Below are positions 5,343 through 62,100 of a stretch of 64,000 nt of DNA, in pieces; the first letter of the stretch is position 1; each line of letters starts with the position of its first letter. The stretch is taken from assembly GCA_964019335.1 (NCBI GenBank), contig OZ025715.1, forward strand, positions 124,001 through 188,000, given 5' to 3'. The notes below the pieces were generated by a model that was given only the letters and a program-made list of their open reading frames with translations, was not told the origin of the DNA and did not search any database. Origin of the DNA: Diplonema japonicum. Taxonomy: Eukaryota; Protista; Euglenozoa: Diplonemea. Position numbers and translations under genes: made by a program.

Positions 5343-5457
5343 TGTGGTCAAAAAAAAAAAAAAAAAAAAAAAATCCCGTGTGGTTGTTTATTTTATTTAT
5401 TTACTTTTTTTTGTTTGGTTTATTGTTTCTTTCCTATTTTTTTTTGTTTGCTTGTTT

Positions 5458-5489
<32 letters not shown>

Positions 5490-5716
5490 CTTCCTTGGGA
5501 CGAAAAACCCCTACTTTTTTTTTTTGAGTTTTAATTTCTTGGGGGAAAAAAAAAAATACTCTCCCCTCCTCCCCAAGGAAACGGAACAACAACAAAAAAC
5601 TTCGTGTGTCATGAGGGGGGGGGGGGGGGGGGGGGGGTGCTTCGAACTATATTTTTTCTTTTCAATCCCAAAATTTCTGCTTTTTATATTAAAAAGGGGG
5701 GGGGGGAAGGGCGAAC

Positions 5717-41088: not shown

Positions 41089-44000
41089 ATGGAAGCACTC
41101 ATGGGATCGGGGATGGGGATGGGGATGGACGCAGGAAAAGATGGGATGTACGTGTCTGAGACCTCATCTGCTGTGTTGGACGTTGAAAAATCGCTGGTGG
41201 TATGTTGCAAGGCAGGGTCTGATGACATGATAGCTGGTGGTGTTGCCGGAAAGTCTCTCCTCCACCACCTGATCAAACAGCCTACAGTCCTCGTTGGCCA
41301 CCTCATCTCCTTTGTTTTCAACATCAAAACCCGGCAGCAAGCCCTCGGCGGTGTTGTGCCTTTCCTGACTTCTGCAATCAGCGAGGAGAAGGACGAAACC
41401 ATTGCAAACGCGTACTTGGGGACTGTTCTCTGCGCGGTACTTGGCAATGACAAAGATAAATCGTTTGCAGGGCTTCTTATCCTTAAGAATATGTGCTCCC
41501 GAACTATGTCAGCCACTGTCTACAATGTACTGGTCATGTCGGTAAGGAAAGTGTCTGAGTTGGCAGAGAAAGGTGTCGTTTTAAGAAAAGGAAAGACAAG
41601 ACCCACAAAACTGGGGCTTGCGGCATGTTGTTGTGTGTTCGACATTGTCGCAAAGTGGCAAGACGCCGAGGAGTGTTCCGCACTCTGGAACACCATCACT
41701 GCAGTGCAAGGCCTTGTAAAGCAGTTTGGGGTGTGGCACGAGGGATACCGCCCGCTTGTTGTTACCGCCTGTACAATGCTTACTTCTCGGCTTGATGAGC
41801 TCTCTTCCCTTCGACACCACCACATTGCTTCAAACCACAACCAATCTCGGCTAAACCTTCCTGTGCAACCACTTACCCCCATCAACCAAGCCTTCTTGGC
41901 CACCCTTCAGCACCTTTCCTCTTTCTCAACCACGTTTTCTCCCTCTGCTCTCTTCCAGCTGGTAAACGAGAACGATCTTCCATCATTTGACCTTGTCCTC
42001 AAGCTAACTCTTATTTTCGGATCAGGTGATGCACTTTTTTTTTTTTTTTAAATTCCTTCTTTCTAGGTTCTGACTCAGACCAGTCAAGCTTTGTAGGACA
42101 CCATCTGAATGCCGGGATAATACAGGTAATGCTTAAGAAAACTGCCAAAACTTTATCCAAAAAAAGTTCCGGCACGGGGAATTGAACCCCGGTCTCCTGG
42201 GTGAGGGCCAGGTGTTCTAACCACTATACTATGCCGGATCGCGGATTTATTTTTTTTTTTTTTTTTTTTTTTCAAATTACCAATGCAGGGCCGCCATGGA
42301 GAGCAACACCTGAGAAAAGGGAAAAAAAGGTGAAGGGAAACCATGGGGAAATAGGGAGGGCAAAGGACCAGGCTTCTGCAAGCAGGAGGAGCCCTGGTCC
42401 CCCCCCCCCAGCCTTTGCTTCGCACGTCAGTGGTTCATTTATTATTATTATTAAAATATTAAATACTCTTTTTCCCTTTTCTCAGGTGTTGCTCTCCATG
42501 GCGGCCCTGCATTGGTATTTTGAAAAAAAAAATTAAATACTCGCCTCCCTAGCTCAGTCGGTAGAGCGCAAGGCCCTTAACCTTGTGGTCGCGGGTTCGA
42601 GCCCCGCGGGAGGTGTTTTTTACCTGACACCATATTTGCATTTTCCAGTTCTGAAGTTCACTTAACACTCCAAGGTGCAAATATTTGTCTGCTTTATATT
42701 CCCCTTCCCCAAGGTGCCCTCTTGTCATCATTCATGTAGCGAAAGGCTGCTTGATACCTTTGATTACTTTTGCGATTTGGACTTATTTTTTCTACTTTTC
42801 TCGAGCTCGGATTTTCAAGGCTCTCTTTTGGCATTTTCTTTCCCTTCCCCCCTTTCTTTTTGCACCCTTCTTTTTAAACCTTCTCTGGCGCACCGATCTG
42901 GCAGTCGGAACATATATTATTATTATTATTAACCCATAACACTCCAAGGCGCAAATATTTGTCGTTTTGAAAAATCGTTTTTTTCTCTAAGTACTTTTTC
43001 GTCCCCACGACCCCTGGATCTCCAAGAACGACTATAGTGAGGAGTTATTTTCAACTGCAATTCATGTTGCACTGCATCACTTTACCTTGTTATCCACCCA
43101 CCAAGTGGGTCCCAAATCCGAGTGGATAGGCGAAAAAACGCAAAATAACGGGTGTGCAGACTGTGTCCAAAAAACGCAAAGGTAAAGCCAAAACAGCTAC
43201 GGACGAGGGTAAGGGAGTTGGTACCCATAGAGACCATAAAATAGGCCAGTGGGGGAAAAAAGCTGTCCCGTGGTACGCAGAAACCTGACGACGCGGGATG
43301 ATTATTCCTTCGGTTTTTTGATAAGAAGTTCACAGACGTCATCCAAGAAGAGACAAACAAGCATAAGGACGCTGTGATTGATAAGATTTCGACCCAGGAC
43401 TCCACCGCTCGCTTTCTCGGATTGAGCATTATAATGGGTTTGCGGCGTGCCCTTTGTCCCAAGATGCTCAATTTACACCCCCCCGTGCACAACTCATTTT
43501 GACATGGTCGTTTTTGAGCACCCTACGGCCATTCAACTCTTCATCCCCTTTGTATTTTTATTAATTTTTGAGCTTTTTTTTAAATTTTCCTGGTCCAAAA
43601 AACCCGTTTTACCTGCAAACGGGGGTTAAATGCTGCCATTTTCCCCGTCAAATTATGAAAAGGAGCAAAAAAGGGACCCCTATGTAGATGGGCCCTGGAG
43701 TGTTATGGGTTAAAAACTAATGCAAAGCTCACTGCTGGTCGACTTGGAGAAGGCATGGTCCGCGTGGGTGTATAGCGCAGAGGAAAGGCACATGACGCAC
43801 TGCGAACTAATGCACAAGAAGAGAAGAGAAGAAAAGAAAGAGAAGAGAAGAAAAGAAAAGAAACATGTCGACCTCCAACAAGAAGAAAAAGAGGCCCGCT
43901 CACCACAAGTCCAGGACGGAAGAAATCCTGGAGAAAGCCCGCGGTGAGCGGGTAAAGGACAACGCCGCCGCCAGGGCGAAGCGCACGCGCGAGGAGGTGG

Positions 44001-47000
44001 AAAGGAAGCGCGCAGAGGGGGTCACGCCGGTGGTGACACCCTCCCCCGGGCAAGGGAAGAAGGCGGCCAGAAGGGCCAGACAGAAGGCAGCAGCTGCTGA
44101 CGCTGCCACCGCCGCCGCTTCGGGCTCCGACGACTCTGTCGTCTTAATTAGCGAGTCGCCGGGCGTTGTCACCTCGTTCACGGTCGACACGCCAGAGGTC
44201 AGGAGGGCGAGGATGAGGACTGCTGCCGCCGACACCACTGCTCCTGCACCTGCTGCTGCCAACACCACTGCTCCTGCACCTGCTGCTGCCGACACTGCTC
44301 CTGCGCCTGCTCCAGCCTCTGCACCTGCTGCTGCCGACACCACTGCTGCCGTGTGGTCTACTGCCGTCCTCACTGCCGCTGCCTGCGACACCGCCCTCCC
44401 CATGTCGGACTCTGACACCGACGAGAAGAACACGGCCCCCGCTCCCGCACCGGCCCCGGAGCCTCACTGGGATCTGGTCCCCGACACGTGGGACGCCCCC
44501 ATCTACACCAACACTGCTCCCCCTGAGGAGGTGCCCCGCGCCGTCGTCGCTCTCGACGACCTCCAGCAGGTGGACGCGATTCGCACTGCGAGGCCCACGG
44601 CCTCCCTGACCTTCGTCCTCTTGACGGAGGTTGCCGGTTCGACCACCCCATGCACCGTCATCGTACTCGCCGGCCAGCGTGTCGTGCACAAGGCCGTGCA
44701 CACCTTCTCGGTCGGGTCGAACCCCCCCTCCTACACCCCACTCGCTTCTTTTGATGGCGGCTCTGAGGTAGTGTACGTCAGCGTGAAAGCTGACAGCGTG
44801 AACGCGGCGAAGGCCAGGGTTCGGGACCTCGCCGCGACCCAGGGCGTGGCGGTGGAGGAGCAGGCGATCTTCCGCCCGAAGAAGATCGACGGGAACGAGC
44901 CGCGGGCACTGGAGCCACGAGGTGGGCCTGCGGCTCCCGGCGGCATCCGTCCATGCGGTACTCCGGGCCTCGGGCGACGGCTGCATGGTCAGGACGACCG
45001 AGCGGCGCGGGGGGTACACCTACGTGCCCATCGTAGCGGAGGGGAGGGCGGAGGCCTTCCAGCTGGCGAAGGCACTGGGCGGGTTGTCCCTGGGGGTGGC
45101 CCATCGCAAGGGTTGGACCGTGAGGTGCCTGCCGGAGACGGAGCAGCGTCTGAGGGAGGCCCTCGCCAAGCAGAGGACAAAGCGTCGGTACCTGCTCACC
45201 GGAGCCCCGCTGTCTGTTACCAGGGCAGCCTTCGACGGGATGATGGACCACATCGGTTGGAAGCCGTCGTCCATCATCCGACGCTCTGACACGGCGTTCC
45301 AGGGCACGAGGCAACTCGTGTTCTTCATCATCACCGACGCCCCGCCCCCCAAGGCCAGGACATGGCTCTTCGGCTCTCGTCTCGTTCGACTGCACGACGC
45401 GGAAAACCACCCGAGCGTCACGCTCCCGCCCCGCACCAACAAGAAGGCTCTGCGACGAGAGGCGGTGGTGTCATCACGTATGTCCGTGACTGCCTTGCCT
45501 CGGAGGAAGCTCCTTTCGTACTCCCTGAAGGTGACAGTGTCACTGAGCGATTAGACGTGAGGATCTCCTGTGTGAAGCGCGTCCCGGTCACCCTCTCCAA
45601 CGTGTACCTCACGCCTGTGAGTATAAACAGAGGAACAAGGGACCCCGAGTACCTACGGCCGGGCAGCCTACCTGCGGGGAAGAACACGATCGTTGCTGGC
45701 GACTTCAACGCACACCACAGCTCTTGGGATGCCAAGGTGACAACGCCCAACGAAAGGGGGAACGTGGTCAGGGACAGGCTTGACACCCACGGCTACACGG
45801 TCTACAACAACCGTGACGAGCCGACGCGGGACTCACCGCCACGCGTTCTGGACCTGGTGGTGGGACGTTGTGCGGAACTGGAGCCGAGGACGTTGGGGAC
45901 GTGGGGCTCTGATCACAGCCCGGTTTCCTTCCGCTTGCCGCTTGAGGACGCCTACTGCTCGGAGCGCCCCTGCCCTACCTGGAACTTCAAAAAGGCCAGG
46001 TGGGACGACTTCTCCGCGGCCGCTGCCGCTCTTCTGACCAAGATCGACACGAAGGGTCACATTGACTCCTTCACGAAGGAGGTAACAGAGGCTCTTCTGC
46101 ATGCAGCTGACGACCACATTCCGCTTTGCGGAGTGCGACGAGGCCCGACCCCCTGGTGGACGGCCGAACTCGAAGACGCTTTCGAAGAACGGAACGCCCT
46201 GCGGGATCGCTTCCTCAAGTCGGCTGAGACAGAGGATGACAGCGTAGCGGCGGTGTACAAGGCGAAGGTCAAAGAGGTGAATCAACTCTTGACCGAGTCG
46301 AAGCGCGCGGCCTGGGGTGAGATGGCGGCTGACCTCAGTCGGAGCAAGGACCTCGGGTCTGCGTTTAGGGCGGTGAAGAAGCTGGACGGCAGACACCGCA
46401 GACCGCACCTTCCCATTCTCGAGGGGAGGTTCGTGACGGACAAGGCGAAAGCCGACCGCCTGGGGGCTCACTTCGGCAAGCTCTACGGCCAGGGTGGTGA
46501 TGGGGACGCGGCGGACGTAGCTCCTTCGACGAACGTGCTTGGGTGCCACGCCTTTACGGTGTATGATCTCACCCGCGGTCTGGGAAGGATGAAGACACGC
46601 AGTGCAGCGGGTGATGATGGCATCTTCGCGGAGATGCTTCTCCACCTCGACCAACCCTCGCTCGGGGTTCTACTTCTGCTCCTCAATCGCTCATGGCAGG
46701 CGGGGATTGTGCCGGGTGCCTGGAAGAAGGGGGTGATTGTTCCAGTGGCGAAGGCAGGGAAGGACGCCACGTTGCTTGCATCGTACCGTCCCATATGTCT
46801 CACTAGCTGTCTTTGTAAGCTGCTTGAGAGGATGATAGAGGAGAGGCTTACCTTTCTCCTAGACTCTAGCGCGTCGGGTGTTGAGGGTCTCCACGATAGC
46901 CAGGCTGGCTTCAGGAGGGGCCGCTCCACGGAGGAGCAGGTGGCGTCCCTGACCGGGTGTCTGTCGAGGAACAAAGACAGTCGTCGTCTGTCGGCTGCCC

Positions 47001-50000
47001 TGCTGTTTGACTTCTCATCTGCGTTTGACCTGGTTCAGCACGAAGCTCTCCTGGGCATGATGCGGAGGAAGGGGATCCCTGAGCCCTTCGTCGAATGGAC
47101 GCGCTCCTTCCTCTGCGGTCGTACGGCGGCGGTCACGGTGGGTCGTTCGCGCGGGTCGACGACGAAGGTGAGGAGAGGGGTGCCCCAAGGGTCTGTGCTG
47201 GGACCCGTCCTTTACACCATCTACGTCGACGAGCTAGCCAGGTTGCTGGTTGGGATGGCGGACCTGTCGGTTCTTTATGCCGACGATGTTGCGGTGGTGG
47301 TCTCAGCCGGGCAGGGCGACCTGGCTGGTCTTGAGCGAGGGGCCCAGGCTGTGATGGACGCGGTTGAGGGCTGGTGTGGGAGACGGGGCATGCTGCTGAG
47401 CTCCAGCAAGTCGCAGGCAGTGTGCGTTCCCTATCAAAAGCGGCTTAAAGTCTACTTCTCTTCGTCGCGTGTCCCGCTTTGCCCGGGGGCCTTCCAGGAC
47501 CCTGTCCTTAACCTTGGGGTTGGGGCCTGTGGGACCTTGTCTGGCGTCCGTGAGCTGTCTGGCTTTCGGGTCGTGGAGGCGGGTGGCAAACGGTCCTTCG
47601 ACATTCCCGCTGCCATCCGGAGGTCCGACATTGGTTACATAGCGGCTCGCCCCCTACCTCTGTGTGGGTCGGCGAAGTATCTTGGGGTCACTGTAGACTC
47701 TGGGCTCACGTTTGACGAGCATGCGGGGGATGTCCTGAAGCGCGCTGACAAGAGGCTGAGGGTTCTAAGGCTCCTGTCGGGCACGACCTGGGGGTGCAAG
47801 AAGGCCACGCTCCGATCTCTGTACCTCACGTACGTTCTCCCGCTACTCCGGTACTGCATGGGTGTTTACTTTGCCAGGCTCAGGGACAGCAGGGTGGAGG
47901 AGCTTGTTGGGCTCCACCAGAGAGCGGCGGTGCTGATCTCGGGTTGTTGGCACGGCTCGGGCACGGCGAAGGTTGTTGCTGAGGCAGGACTGCTACCCCT
48001 CCGACAGATGGCTGAGGGAGCTGCGGCGGTGTTGACGGCGAAGTCGTTCTGCTGGAGGACCTCCCCGGTTCACCGCGAGGTCCTTGAGCAGAAGCGGATG
48101 ACCGGTATGGGCAATGGGTGGCTGCGTGCGGGTATCCTTGCGCTACGGCGCTGCGGACTGCAGGGATGGACGACGCAGGAAGGCTTCAGGAAGTACGACA
48201 CCTTCGAGCTACTCACTGCCTCGCCCAAAGTAGCACCGTGGCATGCGATCCTGGTGGAGTTCAGAACTGCCCTTCCCGGCAGGGTCACGCGTTCGTCGCC
48301 GGACGTGGATAAGCGGAAGGCGGCCGTGGAGGCTCTGGCTGCCCTTCCACCGGGTATCCATGCCTATACGGATGGTTCTGTCGTACGGGACCGCCAGAGG
48401 TGGAGGGGCGGCGCCGGGGTCTACTTGCAGCTCTCCCGCCCCCACGAACCCGTGTCCGAGAGCTTCGGCGTCAGCAATTTCTGCTCTTCCTTCCGGGCGG
48501 AGGGTCTGGCTGTCAAGGTGGCTCTGGACATGGTGGCCGCGCTCCGGAGCGAGCACCCCACGTTGGCAGACAGCCGGCTGTCGATCTGTACCGACTCGCT
48601 CTCTCTCCTTGATCAGCTGAGGGCAGGTCCTTCGCGGCAGAGGGAGAAGCTCGACCACGAGACCTGGGAACTGCTGGTGGCCGCGGCACGTGCGCAAGGT
48701 GCACCAGTCATTCTCCAGTTTGTGCCGTCCCACTGCGGGGTTCCTGGCAACGAGGCGGCAGACAGGCTGGCCGGGGAAGGCACGAAGCGCGAGCTGACTC
48801 GCCCCTCTCTCGACTACAGGTCGGTCAGGGCCCTGGTCCGTCGCCAGATTCAGCAGAGGTCTGCGGTCATTGTCGGGGAGGTGGCCCCGAGGTACGCGAG
48901 GGCCACGGGGCTCCGAGCACTTCCCCCAGTCCCTCCCCAGGCTAGCGGAGACGGTCATCTCGCGGCTGAGGGTAGGGCACTCGGCTCTCTTCTTTGGCTT
49001 CCTGCAGGCGGCTGGACCGAACAGGAAGAAGGCTGAGCTCGCTGTCCAGCGTGTGGAGCACAGATGTCCAGGGAGCACGTTGTTGGGGGGTGCGCTGTGG
49101 TTGGACGGGGTTCGCTCGACGCTCCCAATGGACGCCCCTCGCTGGTGGAGTGCCTGTCAAAACGCGTGACGCAGGTATTCACCCTTATCGCCGACTCTGG
49201 CTTGCTTGACTGGGCCAGATCCGGGGTCTTCACGTCGCCGTCTGCGGCAACAGCAGGTACCGCTGCCCCTTCGTTCATCCCGCCCCCGCCGGCTGTCTCC
49301 CTTGACGCCGGCCCTGCGGCCCCCGTGTTGCGCTGAAGTGAGTAGGGTGAGATCAACTTTTCAATTCTTTTAGTGCTTACGTTCCCTTCCCTTCTCTTTT
49401 CTTATGTTATCATCATCATCCGGCGTCTGGCCTTTCTCTTACCAGTATGCCCGTCCCCACTTTTAAATTTTTAAATTTTTAAAATTAACATCCTCTTGTT
49501 GCCGTGTGCCCTGACATTGTAGTCAAAAACGGATGGCCCGACCTACTCTGAAGTTGCCCTGATGAGTCCTCTCATCTTCGCACGAACGAGTGTGGTACGG
49601 CCATCCCCTCCCCCCGCCTGCCGGAGTGCAACGGGGAGAGCAAATACTTCCCCTATCATCCCCATGCGCACACGCACACTCGCTTCCCCTTTTGATTTTG
49701 AGAGATTTTACTCTCACCCTTTCATGTTTCGCTCAATGGAGCAAATCCCTCTCGAGGGGGCGACCGGGGCCAGTTCCGGTCACCAGAGGTCCCAGTTGAG
49801 AAAAACTACGAACTGGGGTCAAGGTCCCCGTCCGAGTCACGTAGGTCTACGCGGCTTGGAATTAAAGTAATTCAGCCCTCTTCGGCTGTTCCAAACAGGT
49901 GCACGGGTTGGCGGAGTCCACAGCTCCATCTGATTGCAGAAGAACTGGTCTTCGCCCTCCCTGTAATATTTCCATGCTTCCCTTCACCTTTCCCCTTCCC

Positions 50001-50061
50001 AGGTGTTGCTCCCCAATGGTGGCACCTATTGGTATTTTGAAAAAAAAAACTAATAAAAATA

Positions 50062-50141
<80 letters not shown>

Positions 50142-53100
50142 AACAGAAAAAAGTGAACCAAAAAGTACTAGTGAACCCTCTCCCCCTCCCCCTGTGTTTC
50201 CCATTATTACCCTGTCGTGCACCCCAACTTCTGTCTTCACCTTTCCCCGCCCCTTCACACATCCCCCCGTATCATTTCCCTTTGTTTTGAATTTTCTAAG
50301 GCTCCGCCGCCCAACAAAGCTGGCTGAAGGGGATGCCTCCGTGCCAGTGTGCCGCTCGTGAGGGCGAGCACGGACGAGGTACCCCACTCCTCAAAAACCC
50401 GGAGGTTCGCCCGAAGGGTGCTGGCTTGGGAAGCGGGCTGGAGAGCTGCCGGGGTCACGGAGGTGGGCGAAGTCGCGAACACTGGAGCCCACGAACCGGC
50501 CCCACCTCCGTCCTCGGTACGTATGGATAGTTTAGCGGAAGTTTCAAGGTTATCACATTCCTTTCCTTTCCCCCTTTCGTTAGATACAGGGAGACCCTTG
50601 GTCCACCTGTTCTGTCCCCCCCCCCCAGCCTTTGCTTCGCACGTCAGTGGTTCATTTATTATATTATTATAAAAAACTAATGCACAAGCAGTCGTATCCA
50701 AGCGGTTAAGGAGGTGGACTAGAAATCCATTGGGCTCTGCCCGCGTAGGTTCAAATCCTGCCGACTGCGGTTTTTCTATCAAAGGCTCCTCTTGGAGACA
50801 CTCAGAAAATTATGTCCTTCACCCCCATTGCTCGGAAAAAAATCCCATTTCCCTTTTTTTTTTTTTTTATTTCACTCTTCGTCATTTTCTTCACTCACTA
50901 GGGGCCTCATTATTTAACGCGAAATGGCCATTATTTAACGCGAAACGGCCATTATTTAACGCGAAATCGCCATTATTTAACTAGTTAAATAATGAGATTT
51001 TGCAGTTAAATAATGGCCCTTCAGAGTGAAAAAATGGGTCTTGTCGTGGAAAAAAATGCACCCAACCCCTTGAAAAATTTTTTTGGGGTGGGGGTATTTT
51101 GACTATTTTTGGCCATCTGAGGCCATTCCAGCCCTTAAAAGTGGGAATAAGTGCCTTACTTCCCCTTTAAATGCCACGGCGAAATAGCTACCCTGTATTA
51201 CCTTAGGAAAATCCCCAAAAAGCTGACCTGCGTGAAAAAAAAACAGCAGTGAAAGCAGTGAAGAGTGAGTGACTCAAATGACGAAGAGTGAAATAAAACG
51301 ACTTACTTGCCGCCAAATGAGCCATTATTTAACACTCGTTACCCGTTTTTTTGCACTCGGGCCCTGCGGGCCCTCGTGCAAAAAATTCGGGAACTCGAGT
51401 TAAATAATGACTCATTATTTGTTGGCAATAAATAGTTATTTTTTTTTTCACACTCACCAATGATTCGCTCAATAGGAGCAATACCTCCCTGGGGGGCTTT
51501 CCGCCGGAGGTTCCAGCCAAAGAAGGACATCCAGCTGGAAGGTAGGCCCCCGTTTTTCTCTCACTTGACTGAGGGAATAATGTAATTCAGCCCTCTTCGG
51601 CTGTCCCAAAGCAGAGCACGGGTTGGTGGGGGACCAGGGCTCCTCCTGCTTGCAGAAGCCTGGTCCATTGCCCTCCCTATTTCCCCATGGTTTCCCTTCA
51701 CCTTTTTTTCCCTTTTCTCAGGTGTTGCTCTCCATGGCGGCCCTGCATTGGTATTTTGAAAAAAAAAAAAAAAAAATCGACGCGGTAGTGTACGCAGACG
51801 ACATGGCGATAGTGCTGGAGGCGGGAAGTCCTGCCGAGCTGAACAAGAAGGTGCAACGCGCGGTGAGCCTCACGGAGCGATGGTGCGAGACGTTCTCGAT
51901 GAAACTGTCCCAGGAAAAGACAGAGTTCATGCCGGTAGAGGGACAGTTCTGGAACTCGCACGACAGTCTCGCAAACCTCATCAACGCCCGCTTCCCCTCG
52001 AGTGGGGCGAAAGTCAAGGTGGTACGCGAGGCTAAATATCTTGGCGTCACCTTCGACGAAAACATGGACTTCCACGAGCATGTGCAGAAGGTGAAGGGAA
52101 AGATCAACAGCCGTCTTCGCCTGCTGCGCAAACTCGCCGGAACAAGGTGGGGCTGCCGCAAGCACACCCTAAGGACGCTGTACCTGACGTACGTCCAACC
52201 GGTTCTGCGCTATTGTCTCGGTGCTTACGGCAACTTCGTGGGACATGCTGCTCTGGCCGAGTTCGACTCGCTACAATACACAGCAGCGAGGTTGATAACG
52301 GGATGCTTCGACAAGACTTCCGCGACGGTGACCAGGTCAGAGGCGGGCATCTGGGAGATTGAATCCTTGCTGGAACACGACACCCTGGTGCTCTACGAGA
52401 AGGCACAGCGTCAACCGGGGACGACAGCGGAGAAGGCAACAAAGATATCCGGGGGTCAGATGTGGTACGGGAAAAGCTGGCGAAATACCGCGCTCGACTT
52501 GGCGAAGAGTCACGGGATGCCGGAACGCGAAGACCTACCACACCACTCAGTCACTCAGAGCGCAGACCTGCAGCTCCCTCCATGGGTCCAACCCAAAGTC
52601 CTGTTCTACCCCGACCTCGTCCGCAAGGTACACAAGAAGGACGAAAAAAGTCTCAAACTCCGAGCGGCCTTCGAATCGATCAGGAGGCACGGCATCCCAG
52701 ATGTGATCGTCTACACCGACGGGTCAGTCACCGGACACAGGAACGGCGGTTCGGCAGCTGTGATAAGGATCGGGTCTGACACACCGAAGCAGGCACGCAA
52801 GAGCGGAGGAGCAGTGACTTCGGCCTACCGATGCGAACTGAAATGCTGCAATTGACTCTGTACCATACCCGGAGACAAGGTGTGGCGACCGGAGTAGTGC
52901 TGCTGTGCTCGGACTCCCAGTCGGTGATCAGAAGACTGATGCAGGGCCACAGAGAGATGAGACAGAAGGAGGAACTGCTGGCTTGGAAATGGCTGAACGC
53001 GCTTGACTGCCAAGGCCTCTCCACCATCATCCAGTACGTTCCCGGGCACTGCGGCCTACCAGGTAACGAGCAAGCCGACCGACACGCCAAACGCGCCGCA

Positions 53101-56100
53101 AAGGAGTCGACACCGGACGGCCCGACGGACCTGATGACCACAAAGAGCCTCATCAAGAGGTCGGTGAACCGCGACTGGGCAGCCTCGTGGGAGAAGACAG
53201 GTCGGGACAAGAGGTACCGAGAGGAGATCGGCGCGAGGTACCTCCCAATGAAGGAACTGTCCTGCAGACACGATGAGGTACAGATAACGAGACTGCGAAC
53301 GGGCAGGAGCCACCTGACTTGCGGTTTCCTGTCGAAACCCGTCCAGAATGACATACGTTGCCTCTCGTGCCATTCGATCCAGGACAGACACCATCTACTG
53401 ATCGGGTGCCCAGCTGGAGACAAGGTCCGCGAAGAGATCTTCGGGGATGACATCCCCACGACTACGAAGGAGATGCTCACAATGAGGGTGAGTGAGACCG
53501 CCTCCTACCTGAAGAGGATGGACCTCATCTGAGACTCTCACGACCGCCGAGCCGCTGACCGCAATCGCAGGACGTAGGGAAAAAAAAAAAAAAAAAAAAA
53601 AAAAAGAACAGAAAAAAAGTGAACCAAAAAGTACTAGTGAACCCTCTCCCCCTCCCCCTGTGTTTCCCATTATTACCCTGTCGTGCACCCCAACTTCTGT
53701 CTTCACCTTTCCCCGCCCCTTCACACATCCCCCCGTATCATTTCCCTTTGTTTTGAATTTTCTAAGGCTCCGCCGCCCAACAAAGCTGGCTGAAGGGGAT
53801 GCCTCCGTGCCAGTGTGCCGCTCGTGAGGGCGAGCACGGACGAGGTACCCCACTCCTCAAAAACCCGGAGGTTCGCCCGAAGGGTGCTGGCTTGGGAAGC
53901 GGGCTGGAGAGCTGCCGGGGTCACGGAGGTGGGCGAAGTCGCGAACACTGGAGCCCACGTACCGGCCCCACCTCCGTCCTCGGTACGTAAGGATAGTTTA
54001 GCGGAAGTTTCAAGGTTATCTCATTCCTTTCCCCCTTTCGTTAGATACAGGGAGACCCTTGGTCCACCTGTTCTGTCCCCCCCCCCCCCCCCCCCCCCCA
54101 GCCTTTGCTTCGCACGTCAGTGGTACATTTATTATTATTATTATTATTAAAAAAAATCCAAGGTCCCCGTCCGAGTCACGTAGGTCTACGCGGCTTGGAA
54201 TTAAAGTAATTCAGCCCTCTTCGGCTGTTCCAAACAGGTGCACGGGTTGGCGGAGTCCACAGCTCCATCTGATTGCAGAAGAACTGGTCTTCGCCCTCCC
54301 TGTAATATTTCCATGCTTCCCTTCACCTTTCCCCTTCCCAGGTGTTGCTCCCCATGGTGGCACCTATTGGTATTTTGAAAAAAAAAAAAAAAAAAAATCG
54401 GGGCCGGTCGAAGGCAAGAGTCGCCACGAAATCCTTAAGACGATCCTTCCTATTGAGGGGGATGCGCTACCAGGGGAAAGGAAAAAAGGTGGCCATGGGC
54501 AGGACAGTCGAAGGAATGTACTAGGGGGCCAAGAGGCAGACTGACTGCGCCATAGGCGATACAAAAGGAGAAGATTTTGACCAAGAAAGAATGGAACAAT
54601 GGAATATCTGAAAGGAAGTATACACACACTCCCCTTACTGAATACCGTCTTGCTTCACCCTGTGATTTGCCAGGCACAATTATGTCACCCTGTGCAACAC
54701 AGACTTTTGATGTTTCAACCTCTTTATCTTCTCTCCACCTTTTGTCTCCCCCACTGGCAGTGGAACAAAAAAAAATCCGAAGGCGGCTTAGCTCAGTGGT
54801 AGAGCATTGGTCCTGTAAACCAAGGGTCGAGAGTTCGATCCTCTCAGTCGCCTCATTTTTTTCGTGATGACAGAAGGTCCCTGCTCAGGCCACTTTGTTG
54901 ATTTCCCCAGGAAAGCATCCAACGGCGTCCCCAGATCCGGTCCTCGTTCTGGCGTGTAGGAGGCTTCCCCAGGGGATGCCATCCAACACGGCGCTCCGGC
55001 TCCGGCCCTCGGCCGCCCAATGCAACACCGTTCCCCTGCTCCTCCCCCCGAGCTGCCTCAGCCTGCGCGTTGCCCGGGGATCACCACCGTTGAGGTGGGC
55101 AGCCACTACACACATCGCGTTCGTCTTCATTTTTCTTGGCGTGTGCAAACGACCCCTAAAATCGCGGATTTACCACCGGTGATAATTACAATGGCATCAC
55201 AAATTTATAATCGGGGTGTATCACATAGAGTTCACAGTTCATATTCTCGCGGGTTTGCGGAGGTGTTGTCAGCCAGGTCTGATGCACCATTTTGAAGATA
55301 AAAGTTGATTCTCCCCCTCGAAACCAGTTTTTGGTGGCACGAAAGCTCATATGAGCAGTACTGATTCAGACGAGTTCGGGAGTGCCAAAGGGGACATTTT
55401 CACTGACGATGGGACCTCACCTTGCTAATACCATTGTAAAAGCGTGAAATAGCAATCAAACACAGCACTGTGGACCCCGATGTGAGGTATCTCAGCACTT
55501 GGCATATTGCCTTCCCATTTGGTGAAGGATCGAGGTCATTGTAGGGGTGCTTGGGAGGCTGGTATTTGGGAGCCCTGACTCGCGTACAGGATTGGTGTAC
55601 CACGTGATCACTGCAGAAGCACCAATGCTTATGATGCCAAAAAAGGACAACATGGCGACCAGAATGTCTCGGCGGCGCTGCTTCGAGCTTCTTGTCCTGC
55701 AGCTCGAGCGCGACAATGAAAGCTCTTACAACGTTCTCCCATATCTCCTGCGGTGCCTTCAATGGCGTCTTATGAAATGAACGTCGTGCTCAGTTTGAAA
55801 GCGCACCCCACGTGACTTGTCGATGCCACTATTCGTGTCACCTGGTGGATGGCTCGGCATCGGTAGCGTTCCCCTTGTACCCCGGCATCGATAACTTCTA
55901 TACTGGCGTTACCCTTGTACAACAGATGTGGGAATCAAGTTTGTGGTGGAAACAATCCGAAGAAAATCGCCAGAATGTACCTAATCTTACAGCGAAGAAG
56001 CAAGTAGGCCTAGGCAGGCCCAAAAACGGGTTCGCGATGAGCGACAACAGCTTTTGGACTGTCATGCGCCAGTCCGGAAACAACCGCCCAGCAAGCACCC

Positions 56101-59100
56101 GTTCTGAAATGGGGACCAGGGAAGATGCCAGGCGCGACTTCACCAAGGGTAACTGGTCCAAAAAACTGGATGCAGCAAGACAATGCACACACCACATGCG
56201 TGTTTTGGGGGTCCGGGTGCAAACTATCTTCATCCGCAAGGCTTGTACCTTGCATCTGTGCCCAGCTTGCTTTGCGGACTATCACGAACCAGTGGTTTAC
56301 CCACCCCAATCTACCCCCTCTGGAGGCCCGGCCACAACGCCTAAGGTACCAGCGTCTCCAAACACACACCCTTCTCCCCAGGTCGTCTGAGCCAAGTCCC
56401 AAAATCGTTTTATGGTTGCATGCTCGAGGATGTTTTAATTTTAGAAAATAAAAAAGTCGATGGTGACCTTTTTTTTGCCCAAAAACCCCCGTCCTTTAAT
56501 GGTTAATGCAAAATGTCCAGAGTGCGCAACAGTGTTCTCCACGTGAGGGGTTCGATCTCAAAGTGGGTCCGCCAGTCACCAAAGTTGTAGGCTGGGTTCC
56601 CACGGAGAGAGAATCGGAGCGGAGGCGTCAGGTGCGGTGGACCACTCTAAGGGATGTAAGTCCATTGTGTGACACAGTCTCTCGGTGAAGGTCTGACTTC
56701 TGGTGGGTAGGAAGGCAGAACCACATAGGGGGTAAGGAAGACCATTGTGTGACTAGTCGCACACGGTGAAAGCCCAAGGCCGGTGGGTATCTGCCAACGT
56801 GGCCCCTCCTCTACTTCATTCCAGCCCTTAAAAGTAGGAATACGTATGAGAGTTGTGGTCGCCTCATTTTGGGGGGTTTTTTTTTGAAATCGACCCATAT
56901 TTACAGGCAGGGGAGTTAAATAATGTAGAAAAGACTCCTGTGATTATATATTTGTGATGCCGTTGTAATTATTACAGTGTTAAATCCGCGAGCTCGCCTG
57001 GTCACGCTCCGGACTGTTCACCTCGCCATCATCCCTGGCGTCTACAGACGTCACTGCACCTTCAAACGTGCCGCCCCCTCCTCCGGTCTCTCTTGACGCC
57101 GGTCCCGCGGCCCCCGTGCTGCGCTAAGGGATCGCCCCGCGTGTGTGTGTAAAATGGAATGTTGTGTTTCCCACTTTCCTTTCCCTTCCTTCCCCTTCCT
57201 CTCACTGTTTCCCATTTCCCCTTTTTTTTCACACTCACCAATGATTCGCTCAATAGGAGCAATACCTCCCTGGGGGGCTTTCCGCCGGAGGTTCCAGCCA
57301 AAGAAGGACATCCAGCTGGAAGGTAGGCCCCCGTTTTTCTCTCACTTGACTGAGGGAATAATGTAATTCAGCCCTCTTCGGCTGTCCCAAAGCAGAGCAC
57401 GGGTTGGTGGGGGACCAGGGCTCCTCCTGCTTGCAGAAGCCTGGTCCTTTGCCCTCCCTATTTCCCCATGGTTTCCCTTCACCTTTTTTTTCCCCTTTTC
57501 TCAGGTGTTGCTCTCCATGGCGGCCCTGCATTGGTATTTTGAAAAAAAAAAAAAAAAAAAAAAAAGGAACAGAAAAAAGTGAACCAAAAAGTACTAGTGA
57601 ACCCTCTCCCCCTCCCCCTGTGTTTCCCATTATTACCCTGTCGTGCACCCCAACTTCTGTCTTCACCTTTCCCCGCCCCTTCACACATCCCCCCGTATCA
57701 TTTCCCTTTGTTTTGAATTTTCTAAGGCTCCGCCGCCCAACAAAGCTGGCTGAAGGGGATGCCTCCGTGCCAGTGTGCCGCTCGTGAGGGCGAGCACGGA
57801 CGAGGTACCCCACTCCTCAAAAACCCGGAGGTTCGCCCGAAGGGTGCTGGCTTGGGAAGCGGGCTGGAGAGCTGCCGGGGTCACGGAGGTGGGCGAAGTC
57901 GCGAACACTGGAGCCCACGAACCGGCCCCACCTCCGTCCTCGGTACGTATGGATAGTTTAGCGGAAGTTTCAAGGTTATCACATTCCTTTCCCCCTTTCG
58001 TTAGATACAGGGAGACCCTTGGTCCACCTGTTCTGTCCCCCCCCCCAGCCTTTGCTTCGCACGTCAGTGGTTCATTTATTATTATTATTAAAATAAATCC
58101 GCGACAGGTCGGTCAGGGCCCTGGTCCGTCGCCAGATTCAGCAGAGGTCTGCGGTCATTGTCGGGGAGGTGGCCCCGAGGTACGCGAGGGCCACGGGGCT
58201 CCGAGCGGCGTGCTTCCCCCAGTCCCTCCCCAGGCTAGCGGAGACGGTCATCTCGCGGCTGAGGGTAGGGCACTCCGCTCTCTTCTTCGGCTTCCTGCAG
58301 GCGGCTGGACCGAACAGGAAGAAGGCTGAGCTCAGCTGTCCAGCGTGTGGAGCTCGGATGTCCAGGGAGCACGTTGTTGGGGGGTGCGCTGTGGTTGGAC
58401 GGGGTTCGCTCGACGCTCCCAATGGACGCCCCTCGCTGGTGGAGTGCCTGTCAAAACGCGTGACGCAGGTATTCACCCTCATCGCCGACTCTGGCTTGCT
58501 TGACTGGGCCAGATACGGGGTCTTCACGTCGCCGTCTGCGGCAACGGCAGGTACCGCTGCCCCTTCGTTCATCCCGCCGGCTGTCTCCCTTGACGCCGGC
58601 CCTGCGGCCCCCGTGTTGCGCTGAAGTGAGTAGGGTGAGATCAACTTTTCAATTCTTTTAGTGCTTACGTTCCCTTCCCCTCTCTTCCACTCCCTCTCAT
58701 CCTTTTCTTTATCATCATCCGGCGTCTGGCCTTTCTCTTACCAGTATGCCCGTCCCCTTTTAAACTTTTAAATTTTTAAAATTAACATCCTCTTGTTATC
58801 GTGTGCCCTGACATTGTAGTCAAAAACGGATGGCCCGGCCTACTCTGAAGTTGCCCAGATGAGTCCTCTCATCTTCGCACGAACGAGTGTGGTACGGCCA
58901 TCCCCTCCCCCCGCCAGCCGGAGTGCAGCGGGGAGAGCAAATGCTTCCCCTATCATCCCCATGCGCACACGCACACTCGCTTCCCCTTTTGATTTTGAGA
59001 GATTTTACTCTCACCCTTTCATGTTTCGCTCAATGGAGCAAATCCCTCTCGAGGGGGCGACCGGGGCCAGTTCCGGTCACCAGAGGTCCCAGTTGAGAAA

Positions 59101-62100
59101 AACGACGAACTGGGGTCAAGGTCCCCGTCCGAGTCACGTAGGTCTACGCGGCTTGGAATTAAAGTAATTCAGCCCTCTTCGGCTGTTCCAAACAGGTGCA
59201 CGGGTTGGCGGAGTCCACAGCTCCATCTGATTGCAGAAGAACTGGTCTTCGCCCTCCCTGTAATATTTCCATGCTTCCCTTCACCTTTCCCCTTCCCAGG
59301 TGTTGCTCCCCATGGTGGCACCTATTGGTATTTTGAAAAAAAAAAAAATCCGCGATCCGGCATAGTATAGTGGTTAGAACACCTGGCCCTCACCCAGGAG
59401 ACCGGGGTTCAATTCCCCGTGCCGGAATTTTTTCAAAGGGAAAATATCGTTCACGGAACAACACCTGGGGTGGCGTCGAATTTGCCAGTCTTACCAGGGG
59501 TAGGGGTGTCCCATTTAGACACTCGTTGGGGGGTGTCGGTGACTGCCCCGGCGTCCCACTCTTGCTTCACCTCGGTCTTGGCCTCTTCAGTTGGCTCTGC
59601 TGTCTCCTCGGCAGGGGTATCCCATCTGCCTTTCTTTGCTGGTTTATCTGCTTCCTCATTTTTAACCTCCGCGTAAGTCCGGCCAGTGGTGTCATCGTCT
59701 GCAAAGTTGTCCCGTCTGGCAGGGGAGAGGGCCCGGTCGTACCGCCGCTTCATGTACTCGGTCTCCCTGTCGCCGATAGTTTTCCGCTTGCGCTCCAGCA
59801 TGGGGTCGGCTTCCTCTTGCGCTTCTAACGCTTCCTGTACAAAACCTCTTCTCGTCACTTCGTCTTCCTCTTCGTCCTCGTCCATGATTGTTTGATTAAA
59901 CTGCTCCTTGCTTCCTGTTCCATACAAATCCGTGTCGTAGGTGTCCCCCGCCTTCGTAGAGAGGAACGCCTTGTTCTTGTCATCCTTCGCCATTGTTTTT
60001 TTTTCTTTTTTTTTCTCCTTCCCCCTTTCCTTTGCCATAGGTGTTAGAAAAGGACATCGAACCCCCCCTATGTAGATGGGCCCTGGAGTGTTATGGGTTA
60101 AAAACTAATGCAAAGCTCACTGCTGGTCGACTTGGAGAAGGCATGGTCCGCGTGGGTGTATAGCGCAGAGGAAAGGCACATGACGCACTGCGAACTAATG
60201 CACAAGCAGTCGTATCCAAGCGGTTAAGGAGGTGGACTAGAAATCCATTGGGCTCTGCCCGCGTAGGTTCAAATCCTGCCGACTGCGGTTTTTTTTACAA
60301 CCAACCAACCAACCACAACACAAACAGGGGATGTCAGGTGTTTTAATCAAACTGTTGACTACAGGAGGCGACGAAATAGTCCCTGGTGACAACAAGTCGG
60401 TGCAAAATGTATGTCCAAGTGTATTAGCTCACAACAACAGGCAAGTTGCGCAATACTGCGATTAATATTAACAAAGGAGGGAGGTGACGTGGGGTGCAGC
60501 ACAGGACAAGTTGTCGAACTGCTAGAAAAAAACTGTCGTGGGGCATCTGTTCTTGCCGTGGCAATGGCTGCCAGAAGCGGGAGAACAATAATACCGGAGT
60601 TATTGCGGGTAGGGAACGAAAGCTCGCTTGCTGCGTTGAGAGAGGTTTTGAAAGTGAACCCAGAGCTGAAGGATGACGAGAACATGTCAAAGAAGATAGT
60701 CGAAACAGTAATTTCCAATGAAAAAACATTGGAAGGTGCTGACGGTCTCCTTTGTGAGCTACCACAAGCACTGTCGGTCCCCAGTCTGCTGCGTATTATT
60801 CATCGATCTGGGAACAAAAAACTGAGAACAGCAGCAGACTCGTCTCTTACGTCTATTGCAGCAAGGTGTGGGGATTCGTCGGAATTCTTGCACACAGTGA
60901 CAAACATTGTTCTCACACACCAACGGGCAATCGGTGAAGCATTCAGTTCCAAGGGTGGCGAGAGGGACCCTCTCGCCAACCCACCACCACAGAACCCTGC
61001 TGACATCTCAACAGATACAACCTCCCCTCGCGACACCCCCATTGCTAAACAAGCCCTTACATATATCAAAGCGTGGTGTGACCACGTCAAAAACTGGGAA
61101 AACCTAATTGACGATGTGTGGGCGATATTTTTCTCGAACGCTTCTGAAGAGTTCATGGTCTCAGCCGTGTGCACTATTGTTGGCCCGGTTGCTGCAGAGA
61201 AGTGCAACATGACCTGCTTCCTCAAGACTGTAAAGCACCGCCTTATCACACCGCAGATTTCATCGGGTGAAGAACCGCAGATATTCGACAAACTAGCACC
61301 ATTCTTAATTTTGCGACCCCTGAGGCATGTAGCGGAGGATGCCGAGCTTGTCCAAATCGTCGTACGCTTTGCAAAAGACGAAGACCAACTTGCCGAGATA
61401 AGACGCATCAGCTGGGAATTCCTAAGCAGGGTAAGACCAATAGACGCTAACATTAATAATCTGTTAGATGGAGGCATGGAAAACGTGAATGAATTCAAGC
61501 TTAGGGTGTTCTTCGTGTGCAGTGCAGCGTCCCGTTTAGTGGGAGAGGAGATGCGCGAAAAGGACAAAAGCGATGTGGAATGCTTGCTAGCAACTGTAGA
61601 ACGCATGTCCAATCATCTACAGAGCTGTTCTTTCGCCACTGATGAGAAAGCAAAACTCGCTATCTTGGACGCATTCTCATTGACCTTGGCTGCAGCAGTA
61701 AGGTACGGTGTCAAGGCCTCACTTAATGTGTATAGCCCGAAAGTACTTGTGTCAGCTATTGCGTATTTGAGAAAGGCTGGCGTCGGAGTACCAAAGTGGT
61801 TTGTCAGCTCGCTTGTCGAGCACTGCACCACGAAACTGAGAACAGATGAGAAAGTCTTCTCGCCAGTCTGGCTCGAACTCCTCTTTAACATGGTGTACTC
61901 AGTGTCTGAAACTGAACTTGCACCGCACGTTGTTTCTCTATCAGAACTCTCCCTCAAAGGTATCGAACAACCTGTCAACGATACATCCCTAGCCGCTTCT
62001 CTCAAGCTCCTTGCGTCCCTTTTCGCCAAGGCTAGCGACAGTCTCAAAAACCTACCCTCTTGGTTTCTCCCTACCACTGCTCAAGCACTCACACGGATTG

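What the first reader, a model, noticed from the sequence alone, without database searches (positions are those of the whole stretch)
42167..60287. Ingi-like LINEs that insert ~10-13 bp upstream of tRNA genes (position-specific, several families)
Seen: five of six tRNA genes have a retroelement 3' tail ending 10-13 nt before tRNA +1, always co-oriented with the tRNA. Each TSD is the tRNA's own leader. Ser: aactaatgcacaag (43805-43818 / 50675-50688, includes G+1). Glu: (t)aaatccgcga (56981, 58094, 59346, and 42239-42249 on the minus strand). Lys: attaaatactc (42458 / 42532). Thr: aaaaatc at every junction from 51772 to 54777. The TSDs are unrelated in sequence, so targeting follows distance from the tRNA rather than a motif. 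None of these families occurs in the 41 kb of tRNA-free sequence. Known: Pol III targeting evolved in yeast Ty3/Ty1 and Dictyostelium TRE elements through TFIIIB/Pol III tethering; trypanosomatid Ingi/L1Tc elements are not known to me to target tRNA genes. Inference: an independently evolved safe-harbour system in which APE-RT-RNaseH LINEs are recruited to the Pol III start site and leave the internal A/B boxes intact.
Basis: partly seen in the sequence, partly recalled or inferred. Interest (0 to 1): 0.93.

Follow-up and report, generated by a model that had tools for sequence, protein, structure and literature searches.

The report
tRNA-gene-targeting LINEs in a diplonemid
In the marine protist Diplonema japonicum, several families of LINE retrotransposons insert, always in the same orientation, about 12 bases in front of tRNA genes. 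Such a "safe landing site" habit was known only from yeast and social amoebae.

Summary
The genome is Diplonema japonicum YPF1604, a diplonemid, not a trypanosomatid.

- **Window:** five of six tRNA genes carry a co-oriented LINE 3' tail ending 3-13 nt upstream. The sixth, tRNA-Ser at 60206, is an exact empty-site paralogue of the filled tRNA-Ser at 50688. That site holds a 6,856-bp insert with a 13-14 bp target-site duplication (TSD).
- **Genome:** 16 of 42 tRNA genes sampled without regard to elements are occupied. Of sampled tails, 20 of 40 type A and 9 of 20 type B abut a tRNA gene directly. Most others run into another element, forming stacks. Orientation is always the same, and at least 28 anticodons are hit.
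- **Families:** at least four divergent APE-RT-RNase H families take part. Families A1 and A2 are young, with copies 98-99.9% identical; A2 is transcribed.
- **Other targets:** by coordinates, one type-A tail also lies about 17 nt upstream of a 5S rRNA gene.
- **Mechanism (inferred):** a first nick on the template strand about 12-13 nt upstream, guided by the Pol III machinery.

"Ingi-like" is not established. The closest known analogue is Dictyostelium purpureum NLTR-A (2-6 bp upstream). No paper in the searched library describes this in diplonemids. Other first-stage notes report the same pattern elsewhere in this genome.

The parts
42166..42238 (-). tRNA-Glu(CTC), target gene
   Evidence: ARAGORN; Rfam 61 bits
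42239..42404 (-). Leader/TSD (42239-42249, reverse complement of TAAATCCGCGA), then poly(T) and a 5'-truncated A2-type LINE 3' end. Co-oriented with the minus-strand tRNA-Glu.
42405..42457 (+). 5'-truncated B-type tail (3' module of LINE family E), an older insertion upstream of tRNA-Lys. Boundaries approximate.
   Evidence: sequence; B-tail pattern match at C68:166428 = window 42428
42458..42542 (+). TSD ATTAAATACTC (42458-42468), a 63-nt A2-type LINE 3' end with poly(A), and the second TSD copy (42532-42542)
42543..42616 (+). tRNA-Lys(CTT), target gene
43677..43818 (+). Displaced original upstream flank of tRNA-Ser, ending in the left TSD copy 43805-43818. Identical over 142 nt to 60065-60206.
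43819..50139 (+). LINE family A1 with its interrupted poly(A) (50040-50139). It has a (GAAAA)n-like 5' end, ORF1 43865-45289 and ORF2 45362-49036 (APE, RT, RNase H). This copy is defective: a 1,004-nt internal deletion at 45443-45450 and an in-frame TGA at 49034.
50140..50674 (+). Module B (3' module of LINE family E, ending in (TTA)n(A)n), joined to the A1 poly(A). A1 plus B lie inside one TSD pair.
50675..50769 (+). Right TSD copy (50675-50688, sharing G+1) and tRNA-Ser(AGA) 50688-50769
51447..54781 (+). Stack of four insertion events upstream of tRNA-Thr. In order: A2 3' fragment (to 51771); family E 5'-truncated LINE with the RT end and RNase H (51772-53606) plus module B (53607-54148); A1 3' fragment (about 54150-54392); F/D-like tail fragment (about 54400-54776). 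Junctions read (A)nTC.
54782..54854 (+). tRNA-Thr(TGT), target gene
56981..59355 (+). Stack upstream of tRNA-Glu. In order: TSD TAAATCCGCGA (56981); A2 3' fragment plus poly(A) plus module B (56992-58093); TSD (58094); A1 3' fragment (58105-59345); AAATCCGCGA (59346).
59356..59427 (+). tRNA-Glu(CTC), target gene
60065..60287 (+). Empty site: unoccupied 142-nt leader region plus tRNA-Ser(AGA) 60206-60287, the paralogue of the filled site

Best explanation
These are tRNA-gene-targeted (more broadly, Pol III-gene-targeted) non-LTR retrotransposons of Diplonema japonicum. At least four divergent LINE families share the habit: A1/A2, E (with 3' module B), C and D/F. Each encodes an APE endonuclease, a reverse transcriptase, RNase H and a C-terminal zinc knuckle.

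Proposed mechanism: the elements integrate by target-primed reverse transcription. The first nick is on the strand that templates the tRNA, at about -12/-13 from tRNA +1. The window runs from about -14 to -5 and never lies further out. The second nick is on the other strand, usually at -1/+1 and sometimes inside the gene (up to +16).

The result is an element whose poly(A) or (TTA)n(A)n tail points at an intact tRNA gene, flanked by a duplication of the tRNA leader. Every new insertion lands between the previous element and the gene, which builds head-to-tail stacks with the youngest element next to the tRNA.

Shown here:
- the geometry and the orientation;
- the TSDs and a filled/empty site pair;
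- the genome-wide association with many tRNA species;
- several families, of which A1 and A2 are recent and A2 is transcribed.

Inferred:
- The site is chosen by a protein-protein contact of the LINE particle with the oriented Pol III pre-initiation complex (TFIIIB, TFIIIC or Pol III), not by DNA sequence.
- The first nick probably coincides with the Pol III start site.
For: **Filled and empty paralogous sites.** A 142-nt identical flank plus an identical tRNA-Ser, a 6,856-bp insert and a 13-14 bp TSD.

**tRNA genes sampled by tRNA score only** (L031-L060). 16 of 42 have a co-oriented LINE tail ending 3-15 nt upstream.

**Tails sampled by tail similarity only.** 20 of 40 type-A tails and 9 of 20 type-B tails are followed at once by a tRNA gene. 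Of the 34 not followed by a called tRNA, 29 run into sequence repeated in other loci, meaning other elements.

**Near-full-length A copies.** 16 of 29 abut a tRNA, including one intron-bearing tRNA-like gene.

**Orientation and range of targets.** Among 65 unique tRNA genes read, 35 have a co-oriented tail and none an opposite one. At least 28 anticodons are hit.

**Tail counts.** Exact genome counts are 153 type A, 48 type B and 89 type D, against 0 for the reversed control patterns. Fewer than 0.01 adjacencies are expected by chance for 40 tails.

**Distance is measured, not read from sequence.** The non-A remainder is never above 13 nt in 35 type-A junctions. The 12-13 nt remainders are unrelated in sequence.

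**TSDs in stacks elsewhere.** GAAAACAA (L028 to L019), and CTAGAAAACACA plus 16 nt of tRNA-Lys (L024 to L008).

**A Pol III gene that is not a tRNA.** A type-A tail at C52:247078-247097(-) lies 17 nt from the 5' end of the 5S rRNA gene at C52:246942-247060(-).

**Families.** A, E, C and D share only 28-38% amino-acid identity.

**Recent activity.** A1 copies are 97.8-99.95% identical and A2 copies 98.9-99.9%. Many copies keep intact ORF2 frames of about 1,430 aa. A2 ORF2 is 100% identical to a D. japonicum transcript.

**Control.** 80 loci of distant LINE relatives from metagenomes have no co-oriented tRNA.
Against: - No direct evidence for any protein contact with TFIIIB, TFIIIC or Pol III.
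- ORF1 has no recognisable domain.
- Only one non-tRNA Pol III gene was found occupied. It was seen by coordinates alone, and its sequence was not read. None of 6 U6 genes and no other of the 5S genes that could be checked has a listed tail.
- The distance distribution of type-A tails has a second mode at 5-6 nt. This may be a real second nick site or may reflect A-rich leaders.
- Pol III start sites are not mapped in this organism, so 'nick = start site' rests on a base-composition pattern in 28 leaders.
Confidence: 0.75

Rival explanations
1. The LINE endonuclease, or another DNA-binding part of ORF2p such as the C-terminal zinc knuckle, recognises the tRNA gene DNA itself. The cue could be the conserved 5' part or A box, or a leader element. 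It then cuts at a fixed distance, as site-specific LINEs of the R1 or Tx1 type do, with no contact to Pol III factors.
For: Distance and orientation are fixed relative to the tRNA coding sequence. The leaders of unoccupied tRNA genes carry a strongly constrained position just upstream of the nick: C or G at -15 in 28 of 28, then an A-rich stretch. That could serve as a DNA cue.
Against: At least 28 tRNA species with different sequences are hit, and the TSDs are unrelated. One insertion lies at the same kind of distance in front of a 5S rRNA gene, which shares the Pol III machinery but not tRNA sequence. Four families with 28-38% identical proteins keep the same target.
Confidence: 0.17
2. There is no targeting. 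Elements insert at random, and only copies in the gene-free tRNA islands survive. Alternatively, a few tRNA-plus-LINE units were spread by segmental duplication.
For: tRNA genes and elements lie in islands between gene arrays (window 42-60 kb; clusters on C52, C61 and C51). Some tRNA genes with their flanks are clearly duplicated: Ser 50688 and 60206, and the Glu flanks at 42239, 55162 and 56981.
Against: Selection cannot give single-base precision with 35 of 35 in the same orientation. The junction spacers differ from gene to gene across 28 or more anticodons, so these are separate events. The duplicated Ser pair differs precisely by the insertion and its TSD.
Confidence: 0.04
3. The island is an assembly artefact of repeats.
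For: The region is highly repetitive. The public runs available here are short contigs that break at the repeats, so they neither confirm nor deny the long-range order.
Against: The assembly is PacBio HiFi plus Hi-C with QV 59 (PMC13598402). The same junction type recurs at dozens of independent loci with locus-specific TSDs.
Confidence: 0.02

Closest known systems
NLTR-A of Dictyostelium purpureum (Spaller et al. 2016, PMC5006619)
   Same: A non-LTR retrotransposon with APE, RT and RNase H. [quoted passage not shown]
   Different: The host is an amoebozoan; here it is a discoban. No sequence relationship was seen: no Dictyostelium hit among the named homologues. Here the nick is mostly at -12/-13, at least four families share the habit, and stacks are long. 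The passages I read do not state NLTR-A's orientation rule.
TRE5-A and TRE3 of Dictyostelium discoideum
   Same: LINEs that target tRNA genes position-specifically. TRE5-A also hits 5S rRNA genes, needs the B box, and its ORF1p binds TFIIIB (review PMC5911963). This is the mechanistic model I infer here.
   Different: TRE5 lands about 44-54 bp upstream in the opposite transcriptional orientation. TRE3 lands 40-150 bp downstream. Both are L1-like without RNase H. Here the element is co-oriented, its 3' end faces the tRNA 5' end, and it sits about 12 bp away.
Ty3 (yeast) and DGLT-A (Dictyostelium), LTR retrotransposons
   Same: Integration at or near the Pol III start site, about 15 bp upstream of the tRNA coding region, through TFIIIB. 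The position is nearly the same as here.
   Different: They are LTR elements that use an integrase, insert in either orientation, and make 5-bp-type duplications. Here integration is by target-primed reverse transcription with strict orientation.
Ingi / L1Tc of trypanosomes
   Same: Euglenozoan LINEs with APE, RT and RNase H, a poly(A) tail, and a 2A-like NPGP motif at the N-terminus of the enzyme ORF (PMC3708506). The motif LLGLLGLVETNPGP is present here.
   Different: They are not reported to target tRNA genes. From my own knowledge, they have one long ORF and a Pr77 5' hallmark. Here there are two ORFs and a (GAAAA)n 5' end. No Trypanosoma protein appeared among the named hits. Clade membership was not established.

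Membership tests
tRNA-gene-targeted non-LTR retrotransposons (functional class: TRE5, TRE3, NLTR-A, NLTR-B) | Autonomous non-LTR element with APE and RT | tested here: met
   Pfam finds Exo_endo_phos, RVT_1 and RNase_H in ORF2 of A1 and A2. The catalytic motifs are invariant in the alignment.
tRNA-gene-targeted non-LTR retrotransposons (functional class: TRE5, TRE3, NLTR-A, NLTR-B) | Genome-wide association with tRNA genes at a fixed distance | tested here: met
   16 of 42 tRNA genes are occupied. 20 of 40 type-A tails and 9 of 20 type-B tails abut a tRNA. The remainder is never above 13 nt.
tRNA-gene-targeted non-LTR retrotransposons (functional class: TRE5, TRE3, NLTR-A, NLTR-B) | Independent insertion events with target-site duplications at many different tRNA genes | tested here: met
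   An empty and filled site pair, TSDs in the window and in stacks, and 28 or more anticodons.
tRNA-gene-targeted non-LTR retrotransposons (functional class: TRE5, TRE3, NLTR-A, NLTR-B) | Dependence on the Pol III transcription complex (B box, TFIIIC, TFIIIB contact) | not testable with these tools
   Only indirect evidence: one type-A tail 17 nt upstream of a 5S rRNA gene, seen by coordinates.
Ingi clade (Ingi, L1Tc) | RT phylogeny places the element within the Ingi clade | tested here: inconclusive
   No labelled reference sequences were available. The best hits of an exhaustive HMMER search are diplonemid transcripts and marine metagenome proteins at 31-37% identity. No Trypanosoma name appears among the 35 word-sharing hits.
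Ingi clade (Ingi, L1Tc) | APE-RT-RNase H order with an N-terminal 2A-like peptide | tested here: met
   The 2A motif is also widespread in other LINE homologues, so it does not discriminate.
Ingi clade (Ingi, L1Tc) | Pr77 hallmark / HDV-like ribozyme at the 5' end | not tested
   No reference sequence was at hand. Rfam at gathering threshold finds only tRNAs in 41000-64000. The 5' end is a (GAAAA)n-like run directly before the ORF1 ATG.
Ingi clade (Ingi, L1Tc) | Single long ORF (as I recall for L1Tc and Ingi) | tested here: not met
   ORF1 is separate from ORF2, divided by a TGA. The two ORFs are, however, in the same frame.

The most novel reading that the evidence does not exclude
A diversified, still active LINE lineage of diplonemids has independently evolved a way to read the oriented Pol III pre-initiation complex. 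It places its first nick exactly at the Pol III start site on the template strand, a LINE counterpart of Ty3. About a third of all tRNA genes now have a LINE tail as their upstream region. The poly(A) or (TTA)n tails may have taken over the role of the native upstream element: AT-rich at -30 to -20, and C or G at -16/-15.
Probability: 0.4. Interest if true: 0.85.

Novelty: new variant of a known kind. Interest (0 to 1): 0.7.

Why it matters
Targeting of Pol III genes as a safe harbour is a textbook case of convergent evolution. So far it rests on two lineages: budding and fission yeasts (LTR elements) and dictyostelid amoebae (LTR and non-LTR elements).

A third, unrelated lineage (Discoba: Diplonemea) would strengthen the case for convergence. 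It has several active LINE families, base-pair precision, strict orientation, and a geometry not seen in the TRE elements: co-oriented, 3' end facing the gene, about 12 bp away.

It would also offer:
- a new system for asking how a target-primed reverse transcription machine reads the Pol III complex;
- a large, cleanly ordered record of insertion history, in the stacks;
- a possible basis for site-specific integration tools in diplonemids, an abundant marine group in which genetics is only beginning.

It also bears on genome annotation in diplonemids. About a third of tRNA genes have lost their native upstream region.

Tried and rejected
- **Relatives in other diplonemid genomes.** Whether the habit is shared with other diplonemids is untested.
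- **Genome letters.** The last 15 B-tail flanks and the 5S locus were not read. I did not try to obtain those letters by other tools.
- **Read laying on 49900-55800**. All runs are short Logan contigs that break at the repeats, so this tests neither the assembly nor expression.
- **Metagenome scan for relatives**. It returned only distant generic LINEs on short contigs with no tRNA next to them. It is useful as a negative control only.
- **Rfam** on the island and on 20 tail flanks. It found no other RNA family.
- **Two tRNA-like sequences after B tails** (L118, L119). Neither ARAGORN nor Rfam called them.
- **ORF1.** Pfam at E up to 1 and the ESM Atlas gave only weak RRM-like leads. No structure was predicted.
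- **U6 genes.** No tail lies beside any of the 6.
- **tRNA carried by the element as a 3' transduction.** Rejected: the spacer and the tRNA differ at every locus, and an empty site exists.
- **RNase P-made 3' ends carrying the leader along.** Rejected: no second leader is ever seen between the poly(A) and the local leader, since the remainder never exceeds 13 nt.

Full report
**What the window is.** The window is G000:C68:124001-188000 of a 62.5-Mb assembly. One LINE subfamily of this genome encodes an ORF2 that is 100% identical over 1,383 aa to a transcript-derived protein of Diplonema japonicum in EukProt. The assembly size and the longest scaffold (1,191,308 bp) match the published genome note for D. 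japonicum YPF1604 (PMC13598402; PacBio HiFi plus Hi-C, QV 59). The host is therefore a diplonemid, the sister group of kinetoplastids, and not a trypanosomatid. Bases 1-42,000 carry long ORFs on the + strand only. The tRNA island at 42-60 kb lies between two such gene arrays.

**Check of the observation.**
- ARAGORN and Rfam find six tRNA genes at the stated places.
- Five have a co-oriented retroelement tail just upstream, including the minus-strand tRNA-Glu, whose element is also on the minus strand.
- The sixth gene, tRNA-Ser at 60206, turned out to be the most useful. Its 142-nt upstream flank (60065-60206) is identical to 43677-43818, and the gene is identical to tRNA-Ser at 50688.
- The two loci differ by a 6,856-bp insert (43819-50674) and a 13-14 bp duplication of AACTAATGCACAA(G). 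This is a filled and empty site pair inside one window.
- None of the island's element sequences occurs in the remaining 45 kb of the window.

**Anatomy of the elements.**
- The large insert is a family-A1 LINE. It has a short (GAAAA)n-like 5' end, ORF1, and ORF2 with APE, RT and RNase H. Its 3' UTR of about 1 kb ends in ...GGTATTTTG(A)n. A 535-nt 'module B' ending in (TTA)n(A)n follows.
- This copy is defective. Compared with intact copies it lacks 1,004 nt spanning the ORF1 end and the ORF2 start, and it has an in-frame TGA near the ORF2 end.
- Intact genomic copies have ORF2 frames of about 1,430 aa with all catalytic motifs and a C-terminal CxxC...H...C knuckle.
- ORF2 begins with a 2A-like peptide, LLGLLGLVETNPGP. 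The same motif is found in many homologues and is known from Ingi, L1Tc and other LINEs (PMC3708506).
- At least four divergent families end at tRNA genes:

| Family | Identity | 3' end |
|---|---|---|
| A1 / A2 | 76% aa between the two | ...GGTATTTTG(A)n |
| E | 28-31% aa to A2 | carries module B |
| C | 33% aa to A2 | ...CCCCAGTGGTTATTATTGC(A)n |
| D / F | 32-38% aa to A2 | ...GTAGTGGAATATTTATTATT...(A)n |

**Genome-wide test.**
- I sampled tRNA genes by tRNA score alone (30 loci, 42 genes). Sixteen (38%) have a co-oriented LINE tail ending 3-15 nt upstream.
- I sampled tails by tail similarity alone. 20 of 40 type-A tails and 9 of 20 type-B tails are followed directly by a tRNA gene.
- Of the 34 tails not followed by a called tRNA, 29 run into sequence repeated in other loci, namely 5' ends or truncated bodies of other elements. 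Three of the remaining five look like LINE coding sequence. These are stacks, as in the window.
- Of 29 near-full-length A copies, 16 abut a tRNA.
- Over all loci read, 35 of 65 unique tRNA genes carry a co-oriented tail and none an inverted one. At least 28 anticodons are hit.
- Exact pattern counts give 153 type-A, 48 type-B and 89 type-D tails in the genome, and none for the reversed control patterns.
- With a few hundred tRNA genes in 62.5 Mb, fewer than 0.01 of 40 random tails would lie within 15 nt upstream and co-oriented. That figure is my own estimate.
- Eighty loci of distant LINE relatives from metagenomes have no co-oriented tRNA.

**Geometry.**
- For 35 unique type-A junctions, the stretch between the last A of the tail and tRNA +1 is never longer than 13 nt. 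It has modes at 12 and at 5-6.
- The 12-13 nt spacers are unrelated in sequence, so the distance is measured rather than read from a motif.
- Short spacers are at least partly explained by A-rich leaders merging with the poly(A). One stack, however, shows a real nick at -5 for family C (L100 and L036).
- TSDs fix the first nick, on the strand that templates the tRNA, at these positions:
  - -13/-14 for Ser;
  - -11 for Glu and Lys in the window;
  - -12 for tRNA-Lys on C42.
- The second nick is usually at -1/+1. It lies at -5 for Thr and at +16 for tRNA-Lys on C42. That last case leaves a 16-nt tRNA stub upstream and an intact gene downstream.
- Because every event uses the same site, elements pile up with the youngest next to the gene (window Thr and Glu stacks; L028 to L019, L024 to L008, L011 to L030).

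**Mechanism.**
- Shown: target-primed insertion at a fixed distance and orientation relative to tRNA genes of any sequence.
- Inferred: the particle is positioned by the Pol III pre-initiation complex.
- Two observations bear on this inference.
- First, a type-A tail lies at C52:247078-247097(-), and a 5S rRNA gene starts at C52:247060(-). That leaves 17 nt after the eighth A, the same kind of spacing. About 5e-4 such cases are expected by chance (my own estimate). I saw this by coordinates only.
- Second, in 28 unoccupied tRNA leaders, position -15 is C or G in all 28 and position -16 in 25. The stretch -14 to -7 is A-rich, and -30 to -20 is AT-rich. This looks like a start-site element.
  - If so, the LINE nick at -13/-14 coincides with the Pol III start, as Ty3 integration does in yeast. 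The start site is untested.
- The TSD length of 10-14 bp equals the leader length. That may simply reflect the usual stagger of LINE nicks.

**Comparison with what is known.**
- The library search found tRNA-targeting non-LTR elements only in dictyostelids:
  - TRE5: 44-54 bp upstream, opposite orientation, ORF1p-TFIIIB contact, also hits 5S genes.
  - TRE3: downstream of the gene.
  - NLTR-B: similar to TRE5.
  - NLTR-A of D. purpureum: RNase H-bearing, 2-6 bp upstream.
- The diplonemid genome papers do not mention the phenomenon.
- The present elements work like this class and meet its testable criteria. They differ in host supergroup, in geometry and in the number of families.
- 'Ingi-like' is not established. 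The nearest relatives are LINEs of D. ambulator, Rhynchopus euleeides and marine metagenomes. No reference clade sequences were available for a tree.

**Limits.**
- The public reads available were contigs only and could not test the assembly.
- Other first-stage notes of this scan report the same pattern on other pieces of this genome. I did not check those places one by one.

Noticed in passing
window 50140-50674, 53607-54148, 57567-58093; L015 about 5450-5540; L041: Module B (about 535 nt) is not a free-standing element. In 3 of 5 unique copies it follows the 3' UTR end of LINE family E (...GACCGCAATCGCAGGACGTAG) plus an A-run. In 2 copies it follows an A1 or A2 tail plus an A-run, inside a single TSD pair. 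L015 has an A1/E chimeric 3' UTR. This suggests template switching or recombination at A-runs between co-expressed LINE RNAs.
   Followed up: partly
L005 1087-1290; L016 1087-1290: In intact A1 and A2 copies the ORF1 stop (TGA) is in frame with ORF2. It is followed by 47 stop-free codons and then Met plus the 2A-like LLGLLGLVETNPGP. ORF2p might therefore be made by stop-codon readthrough plus 2A release.
   Followed up: partly
leaders of 28 unoccupied tRNA genes in L031-L060 and window 60176-60205: Position -15 is C or G in 28 of 28 and -16 in 25 of 28. The stretch -14 to -7 is A-rich, T is 61% at -6, and -30 to -20 is AT-rich. This is a candidate upstream or start-site element of diplonemid tRNA genes, and it is removed by every LINE insertion.
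   Followed up: partly
window 50865-51298: A MITE-like repeat with 35-nt terminal inverted repeats (91% complementary) and internal CCATTATTTAAC repeats lies just downstream of tRNA-Ser. Contig depth there is 10-100 times that of its neighbours, so it is a high-copy family.
   Followed up: partly
window 54903-55172 (minus strand): The 5' end of another repeated element (82-85% identical to L005, L014, L036, L037, L076 and L120) sits next to an inverted copy of the tRNA-Glu leader TAAATCCGCGA (55162-55172). No tRNA-Glu follows it. This is a remnant of an insertion whose target gene was lost by rearrangement.
   Followed up: no
L089 (C52:109646-109886) and L093/L024 (C42, about 321,900): tRNA 5' stubs of 46 nt (tRNA-Arg) and 16 nt (tRNA-Lys) lie between a poly(A) tail and the next element. 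The second nick can therefore fall well inside the gene. In the Lys case the duplicated copy downstream stays intact.
   Followed up: partly
L003 about 6130-6210; L118; L119: Tails are followed at 12 nt by a tRNA-like gene with a 6-nt intron call (L003), and by two tRNA-like sequences that neither ARAGORN nor Rfam accepts (L118, L119). These may be unusual or intron-bearing Pol III genes.
   Followed up: partly
genome contigs C52 (93-260 kb), C61 (7-106 kb), C51 (86-168 kb), C18 (267-316 kb): Tails and full-length copies are crowded into islands of tens to hundreds of kb, seen from the coordinates. What these islands are (tRNA clusters, centromeres, boundaries of transcription units) was not examined.
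   Followed up: no
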